NCBI GenBank assembly: GCA_964234715.1
Contig: OZ174276.1
From: Podarcis melisellensis
Lineage: Eukaryota
Strand: one strand, 5' to 3'
Length of the DNA: 64,000 nt
Shown here: piece after piece, positions 2,440 to 48,299 of the stretch
How positions within the stretch are numbered: the first letter of the stretch is position 1
How the letters are laid out: each line of letters begins with the position of its first letter
Translations under genes and position numbers: made by a program
Notes under the pieces: generated by a model
The model's input: only the letters and a program-made list of their open reading frames with translations
Databases searched by the model: none
Told to the model about the DNA's origin: nothing

Positions 2440-3345
2440 TGTCTGGAGAGACAATGGAAGAGTACATCATTGGGGGTAAAGTCAAACCATTGGACAGCTA
2501 CAGTGCCTACTGTGGTTTTAGAGATCATACAGGAGAGACATGTTTTATTGTAGCTGGGGCAGATGAAAGTATTCAGTTTTGCTGTTACAGATGCACAATG
2601 GCGTTTCTTCTCTCTGCACTCCTCCCAGTGGTCATTCCTCCTCTGGTCACTGGAATCATCCAACCATACGGCAGAGTTAATGTTGCAAACCTTCATGCCA
2701 TGTTTGCAGATATCTTTGTAATGCATAGTTGCTCTGCCAAAGGGCCTGGTGCCTGAAGCCAGCATGTTCTTGGGGATCCTGCCATCTTCCATTCTGTGTA
2801 CATGACCCAAGCCAGTGTAGACGTCGCTGAGACGGAAGTGCAGACATGCTAGGAATGTGGGCTTGGAAGAGCACATCTTTGTTTGAGACTCTGTCCTGCC
2901 ATGTGATGCCCAAAATCTTCCTGACACAACAGATATAAAAGACATTGCGGCATCACCCCTTCCAAAAAATCAGTGTGCTCCACATTCAACAAGCCTGGCA
3001 GATCTTCATCTTGGTATTGGTCATTAACATCACATTCTCCCATACCCTTTGGGAGAGGCAAGCCACTACTCTATCTGCCTTGACAATACATTTGTCCAGC
3101 TCAGTGTTGATGGAAAGGTTGCTAGTTACAATGGAGTCCAGGTGGACAAAATTATCTACCACCTCAAGCGTGTGGTCACCAATGCTGATATGTGGAGTGC
3201 TGGTAGCATCCTGACCCAGGGTGTTGGTCTTTGTCTGGTTGATGGTGAGGCCGAACTCCATGCAAGCTTGGGCAAAACAGCTGATGAGTCTCTGTACAGC
3301 TTCCTTGGAGTGTGCTGTCAAGGCTGCATCATCTGCAAACAGGTT
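2440..3345 (-). mobile_element. Degraded RTE-clade LINE, 3' part
   Basis: Frameshifted RT peptides: LFADDAALTAHS...FAQAC.EFGLTIN..KT, then RRLHWLG / GHVHRMEDGRIPK. Confidence 0.85.
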
Positions 3346-4159
3346 GCCAGGTTGAGCAGACCTGAGACAACACTGGGATGAGGAGGAGTTAATATGGATG
3401 CCCTTACATTAATGGGGAAAAGGCAGGTGCAAATCCAAATTTTGTTCTAGTGTGGACAAACCCAAAGAGGTTTCTTGTGGATTTGCATGCTATATTTAAG
3501 TGACAGACCAACAAATAATATTTGGTTTCCCTAAATCTTCTAAGTAGTACAGCTAATTCACTGCTAAAAGGTGGGGGTTTTTTCCCCTTTTCATTTTTTG
3601 TTTAAATAGATGACATGGAATGCCAAGATTTACATGCTATTGCCTTCTTTGTTTTAAAGAAAGGAAAATGCAAAGGTTAAATAGAGATTGGAGACCAGAC
3701 TTGCCCTCTGCTCACAGACCCAAAACCCGTAATCTATTCTACAGATTCTGCCAACAAAATTCAATGGAACTGCTTTGGGTGTTTATCCACATTAGCCTCA
3801 TTACAAACTCTAAGCCTGAAAACTATTAAGAAATCCTACAATCTAGATCACTGCCACAGGGATTTATCATACTATTCAGAGGCAATTTTGTTCATCAACT
3901 TGCACAATGAAGTAGTTTATACTAGATTAGCAACCATCTCTCATAATGAATGTCCTGTTTCACAGCGGGTGGGGGGGGGGAGGGAACAAGCACAGTCATT
4001 TCTAAGTGCAGCTGCAATCCTGAGCAAACCATAATCAACCAATGGCCTCAGCACCATTTGTAAAATGGGAGATAAAAACTGCTGCAGCTCTCAGGTACTA
4101 ATCAAGCAATCATATTGAGCATTACTAATGCATAGTTTCAAAAAGGGGCAAGAACCTTT

Positions 4160-4370: not shown

Positions 4371-6289
4371 TTTAAAATAGACAGTGGTCCTATGTGTGCT
4401 TACCTGGAAATAAGTTCCACTGAAATAAAATGGACTCTCTGCCAAATAAATGGGCTTGAGATTGGGTTGCCTGGTTTGCTTTTCAAGCTCTGTGTTGCTA
4501 GATGCTGAAGGCACTAAACTTATTCCTGCTGCTTTGTGTTTGCCTAAACAGAAAGAGATGTCTTCCTTTCATTGTTTCATGATAACTCTCTTGTCTTGTT
4601 CCCCATTTTACCCTCCTGAAAATAAATGGCTTTCATTTTAGTCAACTTCTGTTAAGCTGCCAGCAGCAATCTTTTACTTCCTGTATTTTTGGGTTAACCA
4701 CCATAACAGACTGTCCCAGCTGCCAGGAACTCACTATAGAACACAATTTGAGGGTTTAAGAACTAACGATGCAGTCAAATACACCTCTAAGGTAAAAGGT
4801 AAAGGACCCCTGGACGGTTAAGCCCAGTCAGGTTTGTCCACAGACAGCTACACCTCTACTCGGAAGTAAGCTTAGTAAGTTCAATGGGGCTTACTCCCAG
4901 CTAAGTGTGTATAAGACTGCATCTTAGGGCAGCAACACTTGCCTGGAAGTACATCCCACTGACTTAGGCAGAATTTACCCCTGGGTTAACATGTATAGGA
5001 GTGGTCTACAGTTCACACTCTTTGGAAATATTACACAAAGGAGACAATGGAAAGTTGTTTAGGAGACTCAAAATCTGCTTTTACTCTCGAAAGTCAGGAG
5101 ACAAAGAGCTGTGGTGCCAGAAGATTAATTAGTTGCTTTACAAAATCCTGTCTGAAGGTTCCAGGAGAAAAGAACTTTTCATTCTGGACTGAAACATTGC
5201 TAAAAACCACAGACATCATTGAACAGAACAGAAAAGTGCTTTAGAAACAGCAATACGCATCGCTTGGATTGGTGTGAGAACTAGAAAATGAAAACACTCA
5301 ACATGTCAGTTCATGTCATGTACATTACTCCCTCCTTTTTCAAATGATTCCCCGTCGTAAGATCGCAGCAGAAAATAAAATGACATTGAAGACGTTGATC
5401 CATATGACAAAGTAAGTTCAACCAATCACTCCTTTTGTGTTTCCAGGCTAACTGCTCAAACCTAAACATACAGATAACCCACAGCTACTTTCATGCATGA
5501 AAATACAGTAAACGAGTCCAGAGAGCTCCTAAATTTTAGATGTTGTATAGCATATGAAAATATTATGCACAAAATATTGTTCATGTGAAGAATCACCCAG
5601 AAGCACGCTAAGAGTCCACATATTAATCTTTTACTTTGGTTTTACTTCTCCAAGCTTGCACAGTGATGAACTCCCAAAAAAGAAAAAAGAAGAAAAAGCG
5701 TGCAAGAGCAAAGTTTCATAGACGAAGCGGCCCTAGGCACTGAAAGAAACTAAAGACACAGAGAAATGTTCAAACCATCTTAACCACTGAAGAGGGAGAA
5801 ACACATCTTTAATTTTTTTTACAGAGCAGAATGACAAGGGAGATTCACCATCTAAAAATGAACAGAGACCACCCTTCCATTTCCTACTGCCTGCTCTCTC
5901 TGTAAGCATTCTCTACTTATTTGCAGTTTAGATTATTCTTTCCTAACACCACCAGGGCTGGCAGGGAGCAGAAAGTGGGGGTCGGCCACCGACAGAGTAT
6001 CAAGACAACCATTGTGAGGACGTGAAAACGCAGGGGCATCACAGCATGTGGACTTTGGGGAGATAATCAGAAAGGCCAGCTACTGTGAAGAAATAAGCAA
6101 CTGAGGACTCCTATGCTAAATTTGGAAAAGCAAGTAGGATAGGAAGGGGGGGAGAAGAGGAAGTCTTAGTGACATCGTATTTTACAGGAATTGCAGTGCT
6201 GATTCGAGGGCACAGCCCTTACAGTTCCTAGAGGAAACTGTATGTTCCACTGAGCCACGTTACATGGCTTTTGGAAAAGAAGGGGGGGT

Positions 6290-19900: not shown

Positions 19901-20286
19901 CATAAATCGAAGCCCATAAATCATGTGCAGGAGAGGAGGTTCCCACAGAGGAGAGGAAAAACAATCTGCCCTAGGTTGCAAAGGACAGTGAAAACACTGT
20001 TGAATGTAGATGGTGTTTCTTTGTCACTGGAATAGGTGGCCTTCTAAAAAACCCAGCTTTGGGACGGTTTTTACCAGCATGTTTTTCCTGCTCTGCCACT
20101 CTCAATGAAAACATCTCACGCTGAAGATCATCAGCCCCCCTTCATGAGGGGCTGAGGCCAGGATACAGGGAGTCCCCGAAAGAAGGCATTGTGGAAAATA
20201 GGCTGGAATGTACTAGCTGAAAAGCGCAAGAGAGCAGGGCAGACGGGCTTCAGCCTTGCAGGCTCTACCACAGTGGCTCACATGAG

Positions 20287-20471
20287 CAGGACCAGCCCAC
20301 ACGTGAGGCAACTGCCTCAGGCAGTAGAATCCACGAGGGTAGCAGCTCCTGATGTGGGATCTTTATGCCCTGCCTTGTTCCCAATGTAGATCTTCATTCA
20401 CCCCTTCTTCCTTGTTGGGGGGGGGGGGTTGGGGTTTGCCTCAGTTGCCAAAATGTCTTGGGCTGGGCCTG
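20287..20471. mobile_element. hAT-type MITE
   Basis: TIR CAGGACCAGCCC / GGGCTGGGCCTG; perfect 8-bp TSD CACATGAG (20279-20286, 20472-20479). Confidence 0.85.
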
Positions 20472-20944
20472 CACATGAGGCTGGAAATACTCTTAGAAAG
20501 AGCAGGATGTCTTTGAGCACACGGTCCACTCATTTTCAGTGTCAGAACTGATCCTAACGTACCTGTTATTGGCAGTTATCCAACCTGGCATAAAAGAGGT
20601 TGGGAATGCCAGACAAAATACTTGGGGTAAAAGCATAAGAAGGCCATTGGCCTATCAGCTTTCCAGTGTCTTGGGCAGGGGAAGTGACTTGTGACTCTTT
20701 CACCAGATTCTGTACCCTCTCTAACTTTTAGTCCTTCCTGAGCTGCCCAAGCACCTGTGCATGGAAGCAACGAGCAGGAAATAAAGGATTATGTTTGTTT
20801 GGTCAATGCAAGTTATATGCTGTTTGTTATATGGCATGATCTCCCCTTTCCTGCTCCTGTGTGATGCTATGGAATTCCTCCCCAAACCAAAAACCCATCA
20901 ACTTGGAGTCATGCAGGGGGAGCAGAGGTGGAAAATCCCTTTTC

Positions 20945-21677
20945 CAGGGGTCAGCAAACTTTTTCAGCAGGGGGCCTGTCCACTGTCCCTCAGACCTTGG
21001 AGAGGGGCTGACTATATTTAGAAAAATATAAATAGCCTGCAAGCCGGTCCCACGGCTGCCTCCAGACCTGGAGGAGGAATGCACTCCGCATGTGCTCAGG
21101 AGCGCGCCTTGGTGCCGCCCACTCACTGGCATTGTTGACAAGCAGCAGCCATTCCATCGGCCCGTTCCTGCAGAGCTCCCAGGTGGCGTGCACCATGCAC
21201 TGCGGCCCATTGGCTGAGGCCAGATCAGCAGGCAGGCCACGCACACGTGGCGCCGGGCAGGTAGCATGCAGCTTGCCCTCCAGCTGCTCCAGCAAGGCCG
21301 TCAAGCATGCCACCAGCAGCAGCTCTGAGCCAGGCACCGGGCGCGGGGCCAGCAGGCTCACCAAGCTCTGGCTGAAGCCCCGCGACACGCCTGTCACGAT
21401 GCCCATGGAGCGGCCCAGACCACCGACCACCCACCCGCCAGCCTCTCCACCCATGGCCACACTCGGTTTACCTCAGCGCAGCCAATCCGAAGCCGTGAAG
21501 CATTGTGGAAGTCAGTCCCCGCATGGTGAGACATCCGCGGCTTCTTTTCAAGGAAAGGCCACACCGTGCCAGTTTAGCTCAGCGGGGACTGACTGAGTGG
21601 GTGGCAGGGTCTACGGGCTGGATTTATGAGCCTGGTGGGCCACATCCGGCCCCTGGACCATAGTTTGCCAAGCCCTG
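20945..21677. mobile_element. Non-autonomous hAT-like DNA transposon carrying captured host DNA (Pack-type)
   Basis: Left end CAGGGGTCAGCAAACT; right end AGTTTGCCAAGCCCTG (reverse complement CAGGGCTTGGCAAACT) with GGGCC..ATCCGGCCC subterminal motifs. The GC-rich interior encodes SPR exon 1. No 8-bp TSD is recognisable. Confidence 0.8.
21127..21454 (-). pseudogene. SPR: Captured sepiapterin reductase coding exon 1 (gene fragment)
   Basis: MGGEAGGWVVGGLGRSMGIVTGVSRGFSQSLVSLLAPRPVPGSELLLVACLTALLEQLEGKL...RVRGLPADLAS...EWLLLVNNA matches the SPR N-terminus (GGLGRAVCLLTGASRGFG...PGS.L.L.AR...ADL...LLLINNAG). Ends at the phase-1 donor A|gtgagt; 328 bp with no stop or frameshift. Confidence 0.88.
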
Positions 21678-23503
21678 TGCTAGTAGAACGGTTCCTGCTA
21701 GCCCAACTATTTAGTTGAATCCCGCTCTGTGGCTCATCGTAAAGTATCTGTAAAACTAAATCCAAAATACCATGTCAAATTAAGAACCCTTGAAAGTACG
21801 GTGTGCTTTGAAAATATTTCCGGTTAGTCAATGGAAATCTGAGGCACTGACAGGACTGAATTAACTTGGACCTAGAATACAGGCATTTTCTATTCTAGGT
21901 CTATTTTGCTATGAATTAAGGTGCTTCCCTTGATGTAAGTAGCAGAAGTGTGTGGAATGCTGCACGTACTGGCTTCAGATATTCCTCTGCCTGAACAAAG
22001 TTTTCCAAATGGATCTTTGCTCATAACTATGGTGAGGATTAATAATAATGATGATGATGATGAAAAATTGGGTAAGTTCAGTCTCTCATAACAGCTAGGT
22101 CTTCGGGTGCTACACACACACCTCTGCCTGAGCTAAAAAGGCAAGTATAATAAAACGAGTGAGAACAGCATTCATAAAACTCTCCAAATACCCAAGGCAT
22201 ATTTACCTTGGAATAAGCATAGCTGACCTCAGTAGAACTTATTTCAAAGCAAGCTTGTATAGAGAGCGGAGCAGATTTATAAAAATCCAGATGATAAATG
22301 CATTAACAAATGGAAGCCAAACTGAGAACTGATGGGAATCATTGACAGCAAATGTTGCGCAATGTGATACAGTACTTTGCTCTGTATAAAGTATGTATGT
22401 ATGTGCGTGTGTGTGTGTCTGTCAGCTCAGACCCTGCATGTTTTGATCATGCCCACAGCCAGCCAAGCTTACTGGTATGTGACATTTCCCTGCCTCAAGG
22501 CCAAAAACATTGCCGCAGCTGGAACAAAATAAAAGGTTGCCACCCCTTTCTTTCTTCCCAACACCTTGTGTTAGCAACAGCCTAATCTGCAGAAATGGAG
22601 CCTTAGTGACAGGAAAAGCTACAGCCACAAGTCAGCTGTATTGATTGCTGTTAAGCACAGGAGGAACATTGAAATAAATGATCTATGGAATACTACTGTT
22701 CACTATTAGTTCATTCACCTCTTCAGTTTATATCCTTCCATCCACTGAGTTGCACACTATAAAGCCATACAATAAAATTTTAAATAGCTAAAACATCAGC
22801 TAAGATGCAGCAAATAGCAATAAAATGACAATATTGAAGCAGCTCAGTGGAGTATTTCCATTGCTCCACGCAAAAACTTGGGCATTAATGTATGTTTTAA
22901 GGCAGCACCAATTAACAAATAATTCTCTGCCTGGTTTTCTCAGTCAATGATGTGGTAAGCAGAAATAATTTTCATGCATTATTAGAAGACTGTTCCATGG
23001 GGCTGATTTGGTTTGCAAAAGGCACCTAACTAGGCAAAAAGCAGTGGCAGATTTGGGAGTCTCAGATTTCAATGGCTTTCCTGTGTGATGCCAAAATTCA
23101 TTCTCCTGCCCTGCCCCCCCACCTCTTATGCTCCATTCTAAATCACCCATTCCAGTGCCCTGAGAATCCATGCCCAGTGCGACCAAACCAGTCGCTCTCC
23201 CCTAAATATGCCTCTGCAAACAGCACAATACAGTCGCTCTAAAAAGCAGGGGACATGAAGTGGTGCCAATGTGAAGTGCCCCCCCCAACCCTCAGTGGCA
23301 CATGGTAACTGGTAATAACGGTCCTGCCAAAGGTTTGTCTAGTCCAGCATAATGTTTCTTGCTTGCTTCCAACTAGATGTCTCTTAGCAAGGATATGGGC
23401 AGGGCATGAGGGTGACTGGTGTTCAGAGGGCATGGTTCCTCTGATCCTGGAAGGAAAGTAGAGCCCTATGACTAATAGCCATGGATAGCCTTATCCTCCA
23501 TCC

Positions 23504-43659: not shown

Positions 43660-44122
43660 CTAAACGACAGGCAGAAACACAGCATGAGAAGAACCGAATT
43701 CCTAACTGTTTAAAGGCACTTCCTTCCTAATCCCAGCTGCTTCTCTACACACCTCCTTGAAGACAAAGAGGTACCCAGCTAGAATGAAAGGCCCAAGATC
43801 TGAGATGTCCCCAGTTCATCCTGCCAAAGCAAACTATACAAGGCCACAGCTTATCTGATGACATGCCTAGCATCTCCCAAACAGGCCCTAGTTCCCTTGA
43901 GTGCTTGGAGATGATGTTCAGGCGAACCAAAGAAAGGGGAGCCTGATCAACGGAGTTCTATAAAGGATGCACTTGCTCCTTTACTAAATGGAATCAAACA
44001 GGTCATTTGCTGGCTTGGAGCTGCGGTCTAAGGGAGAATCACTGAGAATTTTCCTTGATGCGCAGTGCATGCATGCAATCTGCACAAAATGTACGTGCTG
44101 CAACTGTGGATCCAACACTCAC

Positions 44123-44202
44123 TCTTTCAGCTCCGTGTAGATAGGCAGGACCTCAGGGTGACACACAAAAGCGAATGCCATGATGGGGATAGTATAGGCT
44201 GT
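44123..44202 (-). CDS. SLC38A3: SLC38A3 coding exon
   Basis: TAYTIPIMAFAFVCHPEVLPIYTELK(D); AG/GT; 80 bp. Confidence 0.96.
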
Positions 44203-47339: not shown

Positions 47340-47782
47340 CTGGGAAGAGAGAAAACAAAAAGTTGCAGGGGTCTTGAAATACTTCTGGAATGGATCATTC
47401 TCCACTTCCTCAGGTGTTACAGACACCAACTCTGTTCAGGGACAGTAGTACCCTAGGGTGCAGAAACTGCCATGAGAAATGGCAGGTTCTGGGTTCATGA
47501 ATCACCCTCTGTCACTCTCTCACGTCTGGATGGGGAACCTGTGGAGTAACGGGAGATTCTGGGTACTTTCTGGCAGGACTAGACAGAACCAAGGCCTCCT
47601 TCCCCACCCACCCCGTCGCATGGGAGCCATTTCCCTGTGGTGTGATCTCAGGCTGCTAAGGAATATGTGCATATATATGAAAATTGTGTGGATCTCTCCC
47701 ATGTAATCGACATACCCTTTTGCACAACAAACCCACTGAAGCAGCTGCTGGTAACCCTCCATAAACGGCAGGTAAGACTTAC

Positions 47783-47865
47783 CCAATTGTTTCATGAGGG
47801 CCAGCGGGAGGATGATACTGACAGAGACCATGATGACTAGATAGTTCCCATTCATGTACCAGTCC
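47783..47865 (-). CDS. SLC38A3: SLC38A3 coding exon
   Basis: DWYMNGNYLVIMVSVSIILPLALMKQL(G); AG/GT; 83 bp. Confidence 0.96.
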
Positions 47866-48299
47866 CTGGAATGACAAAGGTCAACATTATATCCTCTGCA
47901 GGCCTTTGGATGAGAAAACTCTTAATAGTACATATATATCATCAGGTGACGCAAGGCCTGGAGCTTCCACCCAGGCCCTGACCAGGCCCAGGCCTGCTTA
48001 GCTTCACCAAGGTGACAGCATCCTGTGCCCTCAGACCCCACTGAGCTTTCCACACAGCAAGTTTTGTTCACACTGTAAGCATAAATTTGTGTGGGGCAAT
48101 GTCAGGAGAAACTTTGCAGTATCTGACACCGACTACAGTGTTAGATGCAAGAGAGTTTCTTCTGACATCACCTCATAAACTTGAACTTTGGTGCAGTTTT
48201 GCAGGTTATAAAATTTGACCTGCTTGAATTAACATTCTAAAATAGAATTTCAGCTCTACTTAGAAGTGGATAATGGACAACTAAGCACCAAAATCTCAG

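What the first reader, a model, noticed from the sequence alone, without database searches (positions are those of the whole stretch)
20945..21677. Pack-type hAT transposon carrying a captured sepiapterin reductase (SPR) exon 1 with its donor and flanks
Seen: hAT-like inverted ends (CAGGGGTCAGCAAACT and, reverse-complemented, CAGGGCTTGGCAAACT) enclose ~560 bp of GC-rich DNA. Its minus strand (21454-21127) gives 109 open codons matching the SPR N-terminal Rossmann segment, from Kozak gccATGG to NNA followed by gtgagt. Known: human SPR exon 1 also ends at NNA-G in phase 1, and SPR is not in the SLC38A3-GNAI2 neighbourhood in mammals. Inference: the donor, ~90 bp of apparent intron 1 and ~130 bp of upstream sequence came along, so this is DNA-level capture, not a retrocopy. 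It resembles plant Pack-MULEs, and such events are sparsely documented in reptiles. This MITE family may be a gene-fragment shuttle that prefers CpG-island first exons. Caveat: the flanks (CCCTTTTC vs TGCTAGTA) show no TSD.
Basis: partly seen in the sequence, partly recalled or inferred. Interest (0 to 1): 0.9.

Follow-up and report, generated by a model that had tools for sequence, protein, structure and literature searches.

The report
Lizard transposon carrying SPR first exon
A small cut-and-paste (hAT) transposon in a lacertid lizard carries a decayed copy of the first exon, splice donor and start of intron 1 of the sepiapterin reductase gene; it belongs to an old multi-copy family found in several wall-lizard genera, a kind of gene-fragment shuttle that is rare in animals but already described.

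Summary
The minus strand 21454-21127 is an open 109-codon copy of sepiapterin reductase (SPR) exon 1 (E 6e-14 to human SPR) followed by GTGAGT. It lies between hAT-type inverted ends at 20945 and 21677. No other SPR exon is in the window.

The whole 733-bp unit recurs end to end on other chromosomes of Podarcis lilfordi and in Zootoca vivipara. All four complete copies there have their own 8-bp target-site duplication. Plain MITEs with the same two ends also exist, so this is a true multi-copy Pack-type hAT family.

Homology to the real lacertid SPR gene covers only about 15 nt of 5'UTR, exon 1 and 89 nt of intron 1 (21467-21038). The 131 nt upstream (21468-21598) is not detectably SPR promoter.

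The cargo is decaying neutrally: CpG o/e is 0.54 against 1.07 in the gene, and the open frame is expected by chance in 25% of simulations. The window copy has intact ends but no target-site duplication. It is shared with two related species.

Rhineura floridana holds an independent capture of its own SPR exon 1 by a different hAT element. The scan noted similar Pack-hAT elements elsewhere in this genome. Verdict: new member of a known, rare kind.

The parts
20937..20944 (.). Left flank 8-mer CCCTTTTC. It does not match the right flank, so there is no TSD.
20945..21037 (+). MITE 'left-type' end, including the 16-nt TIR at 20945-20960. It is shared with a very abundant generic hAT MITE family.
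   Evidence: Summed contig depth is about 10^4 times single-copy, and read/contig boundaries pile up at 20943-20945. It is 82-90% identical to the ends of Pack copies and of plain MITEs in L002, L007 and L009.
21038..21126 (-). Captured first 89 nt of SPR intron 1, beginning with the donor GTGAGT (21126-21121).
   Evidence: It is colinear with intron 1 of the true SPR gene of Lacerta agilis (L006), P. lilfordi (L005) and Zootoca (L010).
21127..21454 (-). Captured SPR exon 1 coding part: 328 nt, 109 codons plus 1 nt, phase 1. The frame is open but degenerate; the Rossmann motif TGASRGFG has become TGVSRGFS.
21455..21467 (-). Last 13-17 nt of the SPR 5'UTR. This is the 5' limit of detectable homology to the source gene.
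21468..21598 (-). GC-rich filler of unknown origin, specific to this Pack family. It holds a 13-nt perfect hairpin (21510-21522 / 21582-21594) and a CCAAT-box motif CTTCGGATTGGCTGC (21478-21492), which forms a palindrome or duplication in other copies.
21599..21677 (-). MITE 'right-type' end, including the TIR at 21662-21677 (13/16 with the left TIR).
   Evidence: It is 78-86% identical to the corresponding end of Pack paralogs and 73-81% to that of plain MITEs that carry both end types and TSDs.
21678..21685 (.). Right flank 8-mer TGCTAGTA. Its CTAG core resembles the family's target consensus.

Best explanation
Window 20945-21677 is one old, inactive copy of a multi-copy Pack-type non-autonomous hAT transposon family of lacertid lizards.

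Shown: a generic hAT MITE of about 250-320 bp has had its AT-rich interior replaced by two pieces. The first is 130-250 nt of GC-rich filler of unknown origin. The second is about 430 nt copied as DNA from the SPR gene: roughly 15 nt of 5'UTR, all of exon 1, the splice donor and 89 nt of intron 1.

Shown: the composite kept both MITE termini and was then moved by a hAT transposase to many sites. Complete copies on different chromosomes each have their own 8-bp target-site duplication. All copies descend from a single capture.

Inferred: the capture arose by template switching during repair or replication of a MITE (gap-filling or FoSTeST models). It happened near the base of the Lacerta/Podarcis/Zootoca radiation.

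Shown: since then the copies have decayed like methylated, unconstrained DNA. The window copy keeps an ATG, an open frame and a weakened donor, but there is no sign that it is used.

Inferred: the missing target-site duplication most likely reflects a later change of its left flank.
For: - Cargo identity: E 6e-14 to human SPR. It is 82% identical over 431 nt to the L. agilis SPR locus, running into intron 1.
- Full-length paralogs: L003 2704-3444, L002 2766-3462, L004 2613-3426 (P. lilfordi, three chromosomes) and L007 2655-3426 (Zootoca). Their TSDs are 7/8, 8/8, 8/8 and 8/8. L009 holds a further copy truncated at one end.
- Plain MITEs carry both end types and TSDs: L002 43603-43923 and L009 29385-29635.
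- In the window's own genome and two related species, 7-44 distinct contigs cover the cargo at 15-18% divergence. Some span the junction of MITE end, intron and exon, and some show internal deletions.
- Tree: lacertid Pack copies form one clade (100/99) that is star-like, with terminal branches of about 0.13. It sits in a polytomy with the three lacertid SPR genes.
- Decay: 42 of 81 differences from the source are C>T or G>A at CpG. CpG o/e is 0.54 against 1.07. dN/dS against the source is 0.55-1.2. The frame stays open in 25% of neutral simulations.
- Predicted proteins from Podarcis muralis, P. lilfordi and Zootoca are the same chimera. P0001 even reads through the intron into the MITE end.
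Against: - The window copy itself has no target-site duplication (3/8 matches), unlike every complete paralog examined.
- No empty site was found. Organisms B and C carry the element at the same place.
- The autonomous hAT partner was not identified.
- Copy number in the window's genome rests on counts of short contigs, not on assembled loci.
- The origin of the 131-nt filler is unknown, so the element may hold a second cargo.
- No RNA data exist for this species, so silence is inferred from CpG decay only.
Confidence: 0.87

Rival explanations
1. The window copy did not arrive by ordinary transposition. It was placed here, or its left flank was replaced, by one of three routes: ectopic recombination with one of the roughly 10^4 generic MITE left ends, hAT 'alternative transposition' with adjacent deletion or inversion, or segmental duplication. 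This concerns the local history only, not the nature of the family.
For: The termini are intact but the flanks match at only 3/8, while 4 of 4 complete paralogs keep 7-8/8 TSDs. The right flank has the CTAG core of the family's target consensus and the left flank does not. At 20967 the window has the generic-MITE base where all P. lilfordi and Zootoca Pack copies have another.
Against: Only one diagnostic site supports it. The rest of the left end (GGCCCCCTG) is Pack-like. No outgroup with the pre-rearrangement state is available, because organisms B and C have the same junctions.
Confidence: 0.55
2. The captured first exon with its ATG and donor is used. It would act as an alternative first exon or promoter that makes chimeric transcripts with downstream host exons (exon shuffling).
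For: Gene models in relatives start in a Pack copy and splice from the captured donor to exons 40-45 kb away. Examples are Zootoca XP_034995904.2 (SPR exon 1, then an exon, then an eL27 retrocopy; L007) and P. lilfordi CAI5771369.1 (L002). Tan et al. 2021 report that many Pack-TIRs are transcribed as chimeras.
Against: These are predictions whose RNA support I could not see. In the window copy the donor's -1 base is A instead of G, the CpG island has decayed (o/e 0.54), dN/dS is unconstrained and the open frame is expected by chance. No RNA run holds this stretch; the only RNA-like contig is the true SPR mRNA of another species.
Confidence: 0.08
3. The two inverted ends belong to unrelated elements, or are two separate MITEs bracketing an ordinary duplicated SPR fragment (composite transposon).
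For: The TIR match is only 13/16 and is not significant alone. The right end is far less abundant than the left at 80% likeness. Another note of the scan describes a two-MITE composite (s1-501839).
Against: Plain MITEs of 250-320 bp with one left-type end, one right-type end and perfect TSDs exist. Each end here is a half-MITE without its own second TIR. The whole unit is colinear in five other loci.
Confidence: 0.03
4. It is the real SPR gene, a functional SPR paralogue, or a retrocopy of SPR mRNA.
For: There is an open 109-codon frame with a Kozak-like ATG.
Against: No exons 2-3 are in the 64 kb. The real SPR genes of lacertids are complete elsewhere. The intron 1 sequence and donor are retained, which excludes a processed retrocopy. 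Cofactor-binding glycines are mutated.
Confidence: 0.01

Closest known systems
Multicopy Pack-TIRs of animals (Tan et al. 2021, Nat Commun 12:4280, PMC8277862), e.g. Pack-hAT-N8_XT of Xenopus tropicalis carrying 291 bp of the CAPSL 5'UTR
   Same: A non-autonomous hAT element with both TIRs carries a GC-rich 5' gene fragment copied as DNA from a parental gene elsewhere, and was amplified to several chromosomes with distinct TSDs.
   Different: That survey found only four multicopy cases among 370 Pack-TIRs (three in frog, one in alligator). It found none in its single lizard genome, anoCar2, where almost no TIR TEs were annotated. The present family is older. It is spread over at least three lacertid genera, has tens of copies, and carries a coding first exon with donor plus an extra filler.
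Pack-MULEs of rice and other plants (from my own knowledge; mentioned in PMC8277862 and PMC8903248)
   Same: They are TIR transposons that pick up GC-rich 5' parts of genes and amplify them, and chimeric transcripts are possible.
   Different: The superfamily differs: Mutator with 9-bp TSDs and long TIRs, against hAT with 8-bp TSDs. Pack-MULEs are plant elements and number in the thousands.
Ssk-FB4 of Drosophila melanogaster (PMC8277862)
   Same: It is a multicopy Pack-TIR that arose by template switching and then transposed.
   Different: It is young, expressed and under positive selection. The SPR cargo here shows neutral CpG decay and no sign of selection.
Maize Ac/Ds (hAT) non-autonomous derivatives and alternative transposition (from my own knowledge; Ds heterogeneity in PMC3260210)
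   Same: Non-autonomous hAT elements with heterogeneous interiors and internal-deletion derivatives. Alternative transposition can change one flank and leave an element without matching TSDs.
   Different: No transposase source or activity is known here. The mechanism for the missing TSD is inferred only.

Membership tests
hAT superfamily, non-autonomous (MITE-like) element | 8-bp target-site duplication | tested here: met
   The family meets it: 8/8, 8/8, 8/8 and 7/8 in four complete Pack copies, and 8/8 and 7/8 in two plain MITEs. The window copy itself does not meet it (3/8).
hAT superfamily, non-autonomous (MITE-like) element | Short terminal inverted repeats starting (C/T)AG, with termini conserved among copies | tested here: met
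   CAGGGGTCAGCAAACT and CAGGGCTTGGCAAACT. All paralog alignments stop exactly at these bases.
hAT superfamily, non-autonomous (MITE-like) element | Mobilised by a hAT (DDE, BED/hATC) transposase encoded by an autonomous partner with the same ends | not tested
   No transposase ORF lies in the element. The host genome could not be searched with these tools.
Pack-TIR (Pack-hAT) | Both ends come from a TIR transposon family that also exists without cargo | tested here: met
   Plain MITEs at L002:43603-43923, L009:29385-29635 and L007:27629-27893 carry the same two end types.
Pack-TIR (Pack-hAT) | The interior is derived from a host gene whose parental copy lies elsewhere, copied as DNA | tested here: met
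   It is 79-82% identical to the true SPR loci L005 and L006 across 5'UTR, exon 1 and intron 1. The parental gene is complete, next to a Sec15/EXOC6-like gene.
Pack-TIR (Pack-hAT) | Multicopy class: the composite itself transposed, giving several loci with different TSDs | tested here: met
   Five loci in P. lilfordi and Zootoca, four of them with distinct TSDs. In the window's genome 7-44 contigs cover the cargo.
Functional sepiapterin reductase (SDR family, PF00106) | Complete Rossmann fold with TGxxxGxG, the catalytic Ser-Tyr-Lys region (exons 2-3) and the Pfam adh_short signature | tested here: not met
   No Pfam hit. Exons 2-3 are absent. The motif reads TGVSRGFS.
Processed retrocopy | Introns absent, with a poly(A) tail and L1-type TSD | tested here: not met
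   The donor and 89 nt of intron 1 are retained, and the fragment is bounded by TIRs.

The most novel reading that the evidence does not exclude
SPR exon 1 may be a recurrent capture target whose 5' limit is set by the template rather than by chance. Two independent captures exist: one by the lacertid MITE family, and one by a different hAT element in Rhineura floridana (TIR CAGTGGCGTACCAAG, TSD TATAAAAC). Both begin about 14-20 nt upstream of the ATG and both end inside intron 1. If that limit marks a transcription start site or the edge of an R-loop, then the first-exon/CpG-island bias of Pack-hAT cargo in lizards would come from copying promoter-proximal nascent-transcript or R-loop DNA during break repair. 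That would give a testable mechanism for why Pack elements pick up 5' gene ends.
Probability: 0.1. Interest if true: 0.8.

Novelty: new member of a known kind. Interest (0 to 1): 0.55.

Why it matters
Gene-fragment capture by cut-and-paste transposons is well known in plants. In animals it has been seen almost only as single, immobile copies; a survey of 100 genomes found four multicopy cases and none in its one lizard genome.

This finding adds a clear vertebrate case:
- The source gene is identified.
- Both breakpoints are mapped to within a few bases.
- Several copies carry target-site duplications in three genera.
- The capture can be placed near the base of a lizard radiation.

An independent capture of the same exon by a different hAT element occurs in an amphisbaenian. 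Other notes of this scan report similar elements in the same genome. Together these suggest that lacertid-type genomes are a good natural system for studying how Pack-TIRs arise, why they favour GC-rich first exons, and whether dispersed ATG-plus-donor cassettes seed chimeric genes. For SPR biology itself it is of no consequence, because the copy is a decaying pseudo-exon.

Tried and rejected
- Pfam on the 109-aa frame gave no hit, because the fragment is too short and degenerate.
- I looked for SPR exons 2-3 in the window by tblastn and found none.
- DNA comparison with the Rhineura SPR locus aligns only the coding exon. That species is too distant to test the flanks, so lacertid loci were fetched instead.
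- I tested whether 21468-21598 is SPR promoter. BLAST against ±5 kb of the true loci found nothing. Smith-Waterman against 600 nt upstream, and dinucleotide-shuffle tests on -90..-18, were all at chance level. By eye some alignments looked tempting (TAAAAG box, CCCGGC), and I reject them as unsupported.
- The same test for the Rhineura element gave p 0.41, although the best weak alignment lies on the colinear diagonal.
- I looked for a displaced TSD within 300 nt of either end and found none.
- Rfam and tRNA scans of the element found nothing.
- Pfam on ten long ORFs of the window, to place the element in a gene, found nothing.
- A look-up of the Podarcis muralis protein P0001 on contigs found it not on record.
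- A findings look-up by sequence was blank.
- No empty site was found. The two related species laid on the stretch both carry the element.
- The RNA-like run X18 gave only the true SPR mRNA of another species, which is no evidence for expression of the element.
- I considered selection on the open frame and rejected it.

Full report
**1. What is in the sequence**

- CAGGGGTCAGCAAACT sits at 20945-20960, and its 13/16 reverse complement sits at 21662-21677.
- As a bare 16-mer pair this is not significant: 30 of 100 shuffles give two matches.
- The interior is GC-rich, 0.64 against about 0.38-0.52 nearby.
- The minus strand 21454-21127 translates into 109 open codons.
- These codons match sepiapterin reductase residues 1-108: E 6e-14 to human SPR chains in the PDB, with no other family close, and 56% identity to Rhineura SPR.
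- The exon ends in phase 1 and is followed by GTGAGT (21126-21121).
- tblastn with a full-length squamate SPR finds nothing else in the 64 kb, so exons 2 and 3 are absent.
- Pfam does not recognise the fragment.

**2. It is one copy of a mobile family**

A search of protein representatives returned a set of short 'hypothetical' proteins 63-70% identical to the frame. They come from Podarcis muralis, P. lilfordi and Zootoca vivipara. One of them, P0001, even reads through the intron remnant into the MITE end, exactly like the 156-aa read-through ORF of the window.

I fetched the DNA for these proteins. The whole 733-bp unit is colinear, end to end, at the following loci:

| Locus | Species and record | Coordinates | TSD |
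|---|---|---|---|
| L003 | P. lilfordi OX395135 | 2704-3444 | GTGTGGAC / ATGTGGAC (7/8) |
| L002 | P. lilfordi OX395128 | 2766-3462 | GTCTGGGG (8/8) |
| L004 | P. lilfordi OX395140 | 2613-3426 | AGCTGGAG (8/8) |
| L007 | Zootoca OY735917 | 2655-3426 | TTTTAGCC (8/8) |
| L009 | P. lilfordi OX395137 | from 42026 | truncated copy |

Similarity stops exactly at the terminal CAG...CTG of each copy.

The same loci also contain plain MITEs of 250-320 bp. Each has one 'right-type' end, one 'left-type' end, an AT-rich interior and its own TSD: L002:43603-43923 (GCATAAAC, 8/8) and L009:29385-29635 (7/8). The two ends of the window element therefore belong to a single hAT MITE family, and the SPR-bearing composite has itself transposed repeatedly.

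In the window's own genome and two related species I laid public contigs on 20000-22600 at 80% likeness.
- The left end (20945-21043) is enormously repeated, with summed depth about 10^4 times single-copy. Boundaries pile up at 20943-20945, and the preceding consensus is a weak ..TCTAGA.. .
- The cargo is covered by 7-44 distinct contigs per species, at 15-18% divergence.
- Several of these contigs span the MITE-end/intron/exon junction (for example X1 record 2, 20978-21293) or show internal deletions.
- Depth from contigs is not a copy number, so I say only 'tens of copies'.
- Contigs of organisms B and C cross both junctions of this very insertion with 2-4% differences. The insertion is therefore shared, and no empty site was found.

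**3. What exactly was captured**

I fetched the true SPR loci of P. lilfordi (L005), Lacerta agilis (L006), Zootoca (L010) and Rhineura floridana (L001).
- Window 21467-21038 aligns to L006 4987-5414 at 82% identity, and window 21458-21044 aligns to L005 at 79%.
- The cargo is therefore 13-17 nt of 5'UTR, exon 1 and the first 83-89 nt of intron 1. It ends at GGGACCGGCTTGCA, where the MITE's ...TATTTATATTTTTC AAATATAGTC begins.
- The retained intron and donor exclude a processed retrocopy.
- The real gene is complete. In P. lilfordi it lies next to a Sec15/EXOC6-like gene, not near GNAI2.

The 131 nt between the cargo and the right MITE end (21468-21598) is conserved among Pack copies and is longer in some of them.
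- It contains a perfect 13-nt hairpin and a CCAAT-box palindrome, GGCTTCGGATTGGCTGCAGGAAG.
- It is not detectably related to the 140-600 nt upstream of any lacertid SPR gene. There was no BLAST hit within ±5 kb, and local-alignment scores were at the level of shuffles.
- It is not part of the generic MITE either, and it has no Rfam match.
The origin of this filler is unknown.

**4. History**

A maximum-likelihood tree was built on the cargo region.
- It separates {Rhineura SPR + Rhineura SPR-like copy} from {lacertid SPR genes + lacertid Pack copies} with 100/100 support.
- All six lacertid Pack copies fall in one clade (100/99). That clade is star-like, with terminal branches of about 0.13, and sits in an unresolved polytomy with the SPR genes of Lacerta, Podarcis and Zootoca (AU test p 0.27).
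- The window copy is sister to L003 (97/94), but their flanks differ, so they are paralogues.
- This fits a single capture near the base of that radiation, followed by a burst of transposition.

The copies then decayed.
- Against the L. agilis gene the window cargo has 81 differences. 65 are transitions, and 42 are C>T or G>A at CpG positions.
- CpG o/e has fallen from 1.07 to 0.54, and GC from 0.78 to 0.67.
- dN/dS of Pack copies against the gene is 0.55-1.2, while gene-to-gene comparisons give about 0.43.
- Other copies have frame-breaking deletions near the start.
- Neutral simulations with the observed substitution spectrum leave the 108-codon frame open in 25% of runs. The open frame is therefore no evidence of selection.
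- The cofactor-binding motif TGASRGFG reads TGVSRGFS.
- The base before the donor has changed from G to A.

**5. The missing target-site duplication**

The window copy has intact termini, but its flanks are CCCTTTTC and TGCTAGTA (3/8). No displaced copy of either 8-mer lies within 300 nt.
- All four complete paralogues keep their TSDs, so simple decay is an unlikely cause.
- The right flank has the CTAG core of the family's target consensus, and the left flank does not.
- I infer that the left flank changed after insertion. One route is ectopic recombination with one of the very many generic MITE left ends. Another is an Ac/Ds-style alternative transposition with adjacent deletion.
- One site fits this idea: 20967 carries the generic-MITE base rather than the base shared by the P. 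lilfordi and Zootoca Pack copies. One site proves nothing.
- This point stays open.

**6. An independent second capture**

Rhineura floridana has a 113-aa 'sepiapterin reductase-like' model (P0007) on a different chromosome from its SPR gene.
- L008:2987-3821 is colinear with the Rhineura SPR locus L001:5987-7030. This covers exon 1 plus part of intron 1, at 85% and 77% identity.
- It lies between 15-nt inverted repeats CAGTGGCGTACCAAG / CTAGGTACGCCACTG (2900-2914 and 3881-3895).
- These repeats are flanked by a perfect 8-bp duplication, TATAAAAC.
- Different ends, a longer intron segment and the tree together show a separate capture of the same exon by another hAT-type element.

In both lineages detectable homology to the source begins 14-20 nt upstream of the ATG. 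I could not show further upstream homology in either lineage. In Rhineura, however, the best weak alignment lies on the colinear diagonal, so the true breakpoint there may be further upstream.

All SPR genes share a TAAAAG box at about -40. Against a start site at -17, an RNA-like 2119-nt contig of another species extends about 96 nt upstream of the ATG. I therefore record the coincidence as unexplained, not as a finding.

**7. Possible use**

Gene models in relatives start at the captured ATG and splice from the captured donor to distant exons.
- Zootoca XP_034995904.2: exon 1 = L007:3001-3243, then 43673-43768, then an eL27 retrocopy at 47540-47884.
- P. lilfordi CAI5771369.1: L002:3001-3279, then 44058-44174.

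I could not see their RNA support, and no RNA run holds the window stretch. For the window copy nothing indicates use.

**8. Comparison with what is known**

Tan et al. 2021 (PMC8277862) define Pack-TIRs in animals.
- They found 370 in 100 genomes, 208 of them hAT.
- Only four were multicopy (three in frog, one in alligator), besides Drosophila Ssk-FB4.
- Multicopy cases tend to capture GC-rich DNA.
- They propose gap-filling and FoSTeST (fork stalling, template switching, transposition) as origins.
- Their one lizard genome (anoCar2) had 0 Pack-TIRs and almost no annotated TIR elements.

The present element meets every defining feature of a multicopy Pack-hAT that I could test. It is a new member of that kind, not a new kind.

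Other notes of this scan report similar Pack-hAT elements with first-exon-like cargo elsewhere in the same genome (s1-498154, s1-504995, s1-494271, s1-501839). The scan has therefore found this phenomenon before, on other DNA. I did not test those notes.

**9. Limits**

- The host genome could not be searched directly.
- Copy numbers in the window's species are rough.
- The transposase source, the filler's origin, the cause of the missing TSD and any transcription remain untested.

Noticed in passing
L008:2900-3895 (Rhineura floridana CM057606.1): This is an independent Pack-type hAT element. It has TIRs CAGTGGCGTACCAAG and a perfect TSD TATAAAAC. Its cargo is Rhineura's own SPR exon 1 plus part of intron 1 (colinear with L001:5987-7030). 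It is annotated as 'sepiapterin reductase-like' (XP_061468803.1).
   Followed up: partly
L007:3001-47887 (Zootoca vivipara OY735917.1): NCBI model XP_034995904.2 'eL27-like' is a chimera. Its first exon is the SPR exon 1 of a Pack copy, spliced from the captured donor to an exon at 43673-43768 and to an eL27 retrocopy at 47540-47884. RNA support is unknown.
   Followed up: partly
L002:3001-44177 and L009:3001-42582 (Podarcis lilfordi): Two further gene models (CAI5771369.1, CAI5789214.1) use a Pack SPR exon as first or last coding exon across about 40 kb. These may be annotation artefacts or real chimeric transcripts.
   Followed up: no
window 20261-20521: This is a highly repeated segment of about 260 bp, with summed contig depth 50-400 times single-copy in three species. 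It has a G-run boundary at about 20429 (loose-end consensus ..GGGGGGGGGGGGGGCACCATT) and is probably a SINE-like repeat. It is unrelated to the finding.
   Followed up: no
window 21218-21421 versus run X18: A 2119-nt, high-depth contig from an RNA-like run of another species (organism E) matches the SPR exon at 83% identity and extends about 96 nt upstream of its ATG. It is most likely the real SPR mRNA of that species, not a transcript of the element.
   Followed up: partly
L002:43603-43923, L007:27629-27893: Generic copies of the MITE carry one or two tandem copies of an internal unit of about 70 nt (TGTTTTTACATGAGTAGAATGTGTCCTTTTATTTAAAATGCATCTCTGGGTTATTTGTGGGGC). This accounts for their size differences.
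   Followed up: no
L001:5955-5975, L005/L006 about 4955-4975, L010 about 1955-1975: A conserved CTGCGTAAAAGCGCACG box lies about 40 nt upstream of the SPR start codon in Rhineura and three lacertids. It is a candidate TATA-like core promoter element and is absent from the Pack cargo.
   Followed up: no
L005:12159-12733: In P. lilfordi the real SPR gene is followed by a Sec15/EXOC6-like gene. From memory this matches the human 2p13 neighbourhood (SPR near EXOC6B), which would support that locus as the ancestral SPR position.
   Followed up: no
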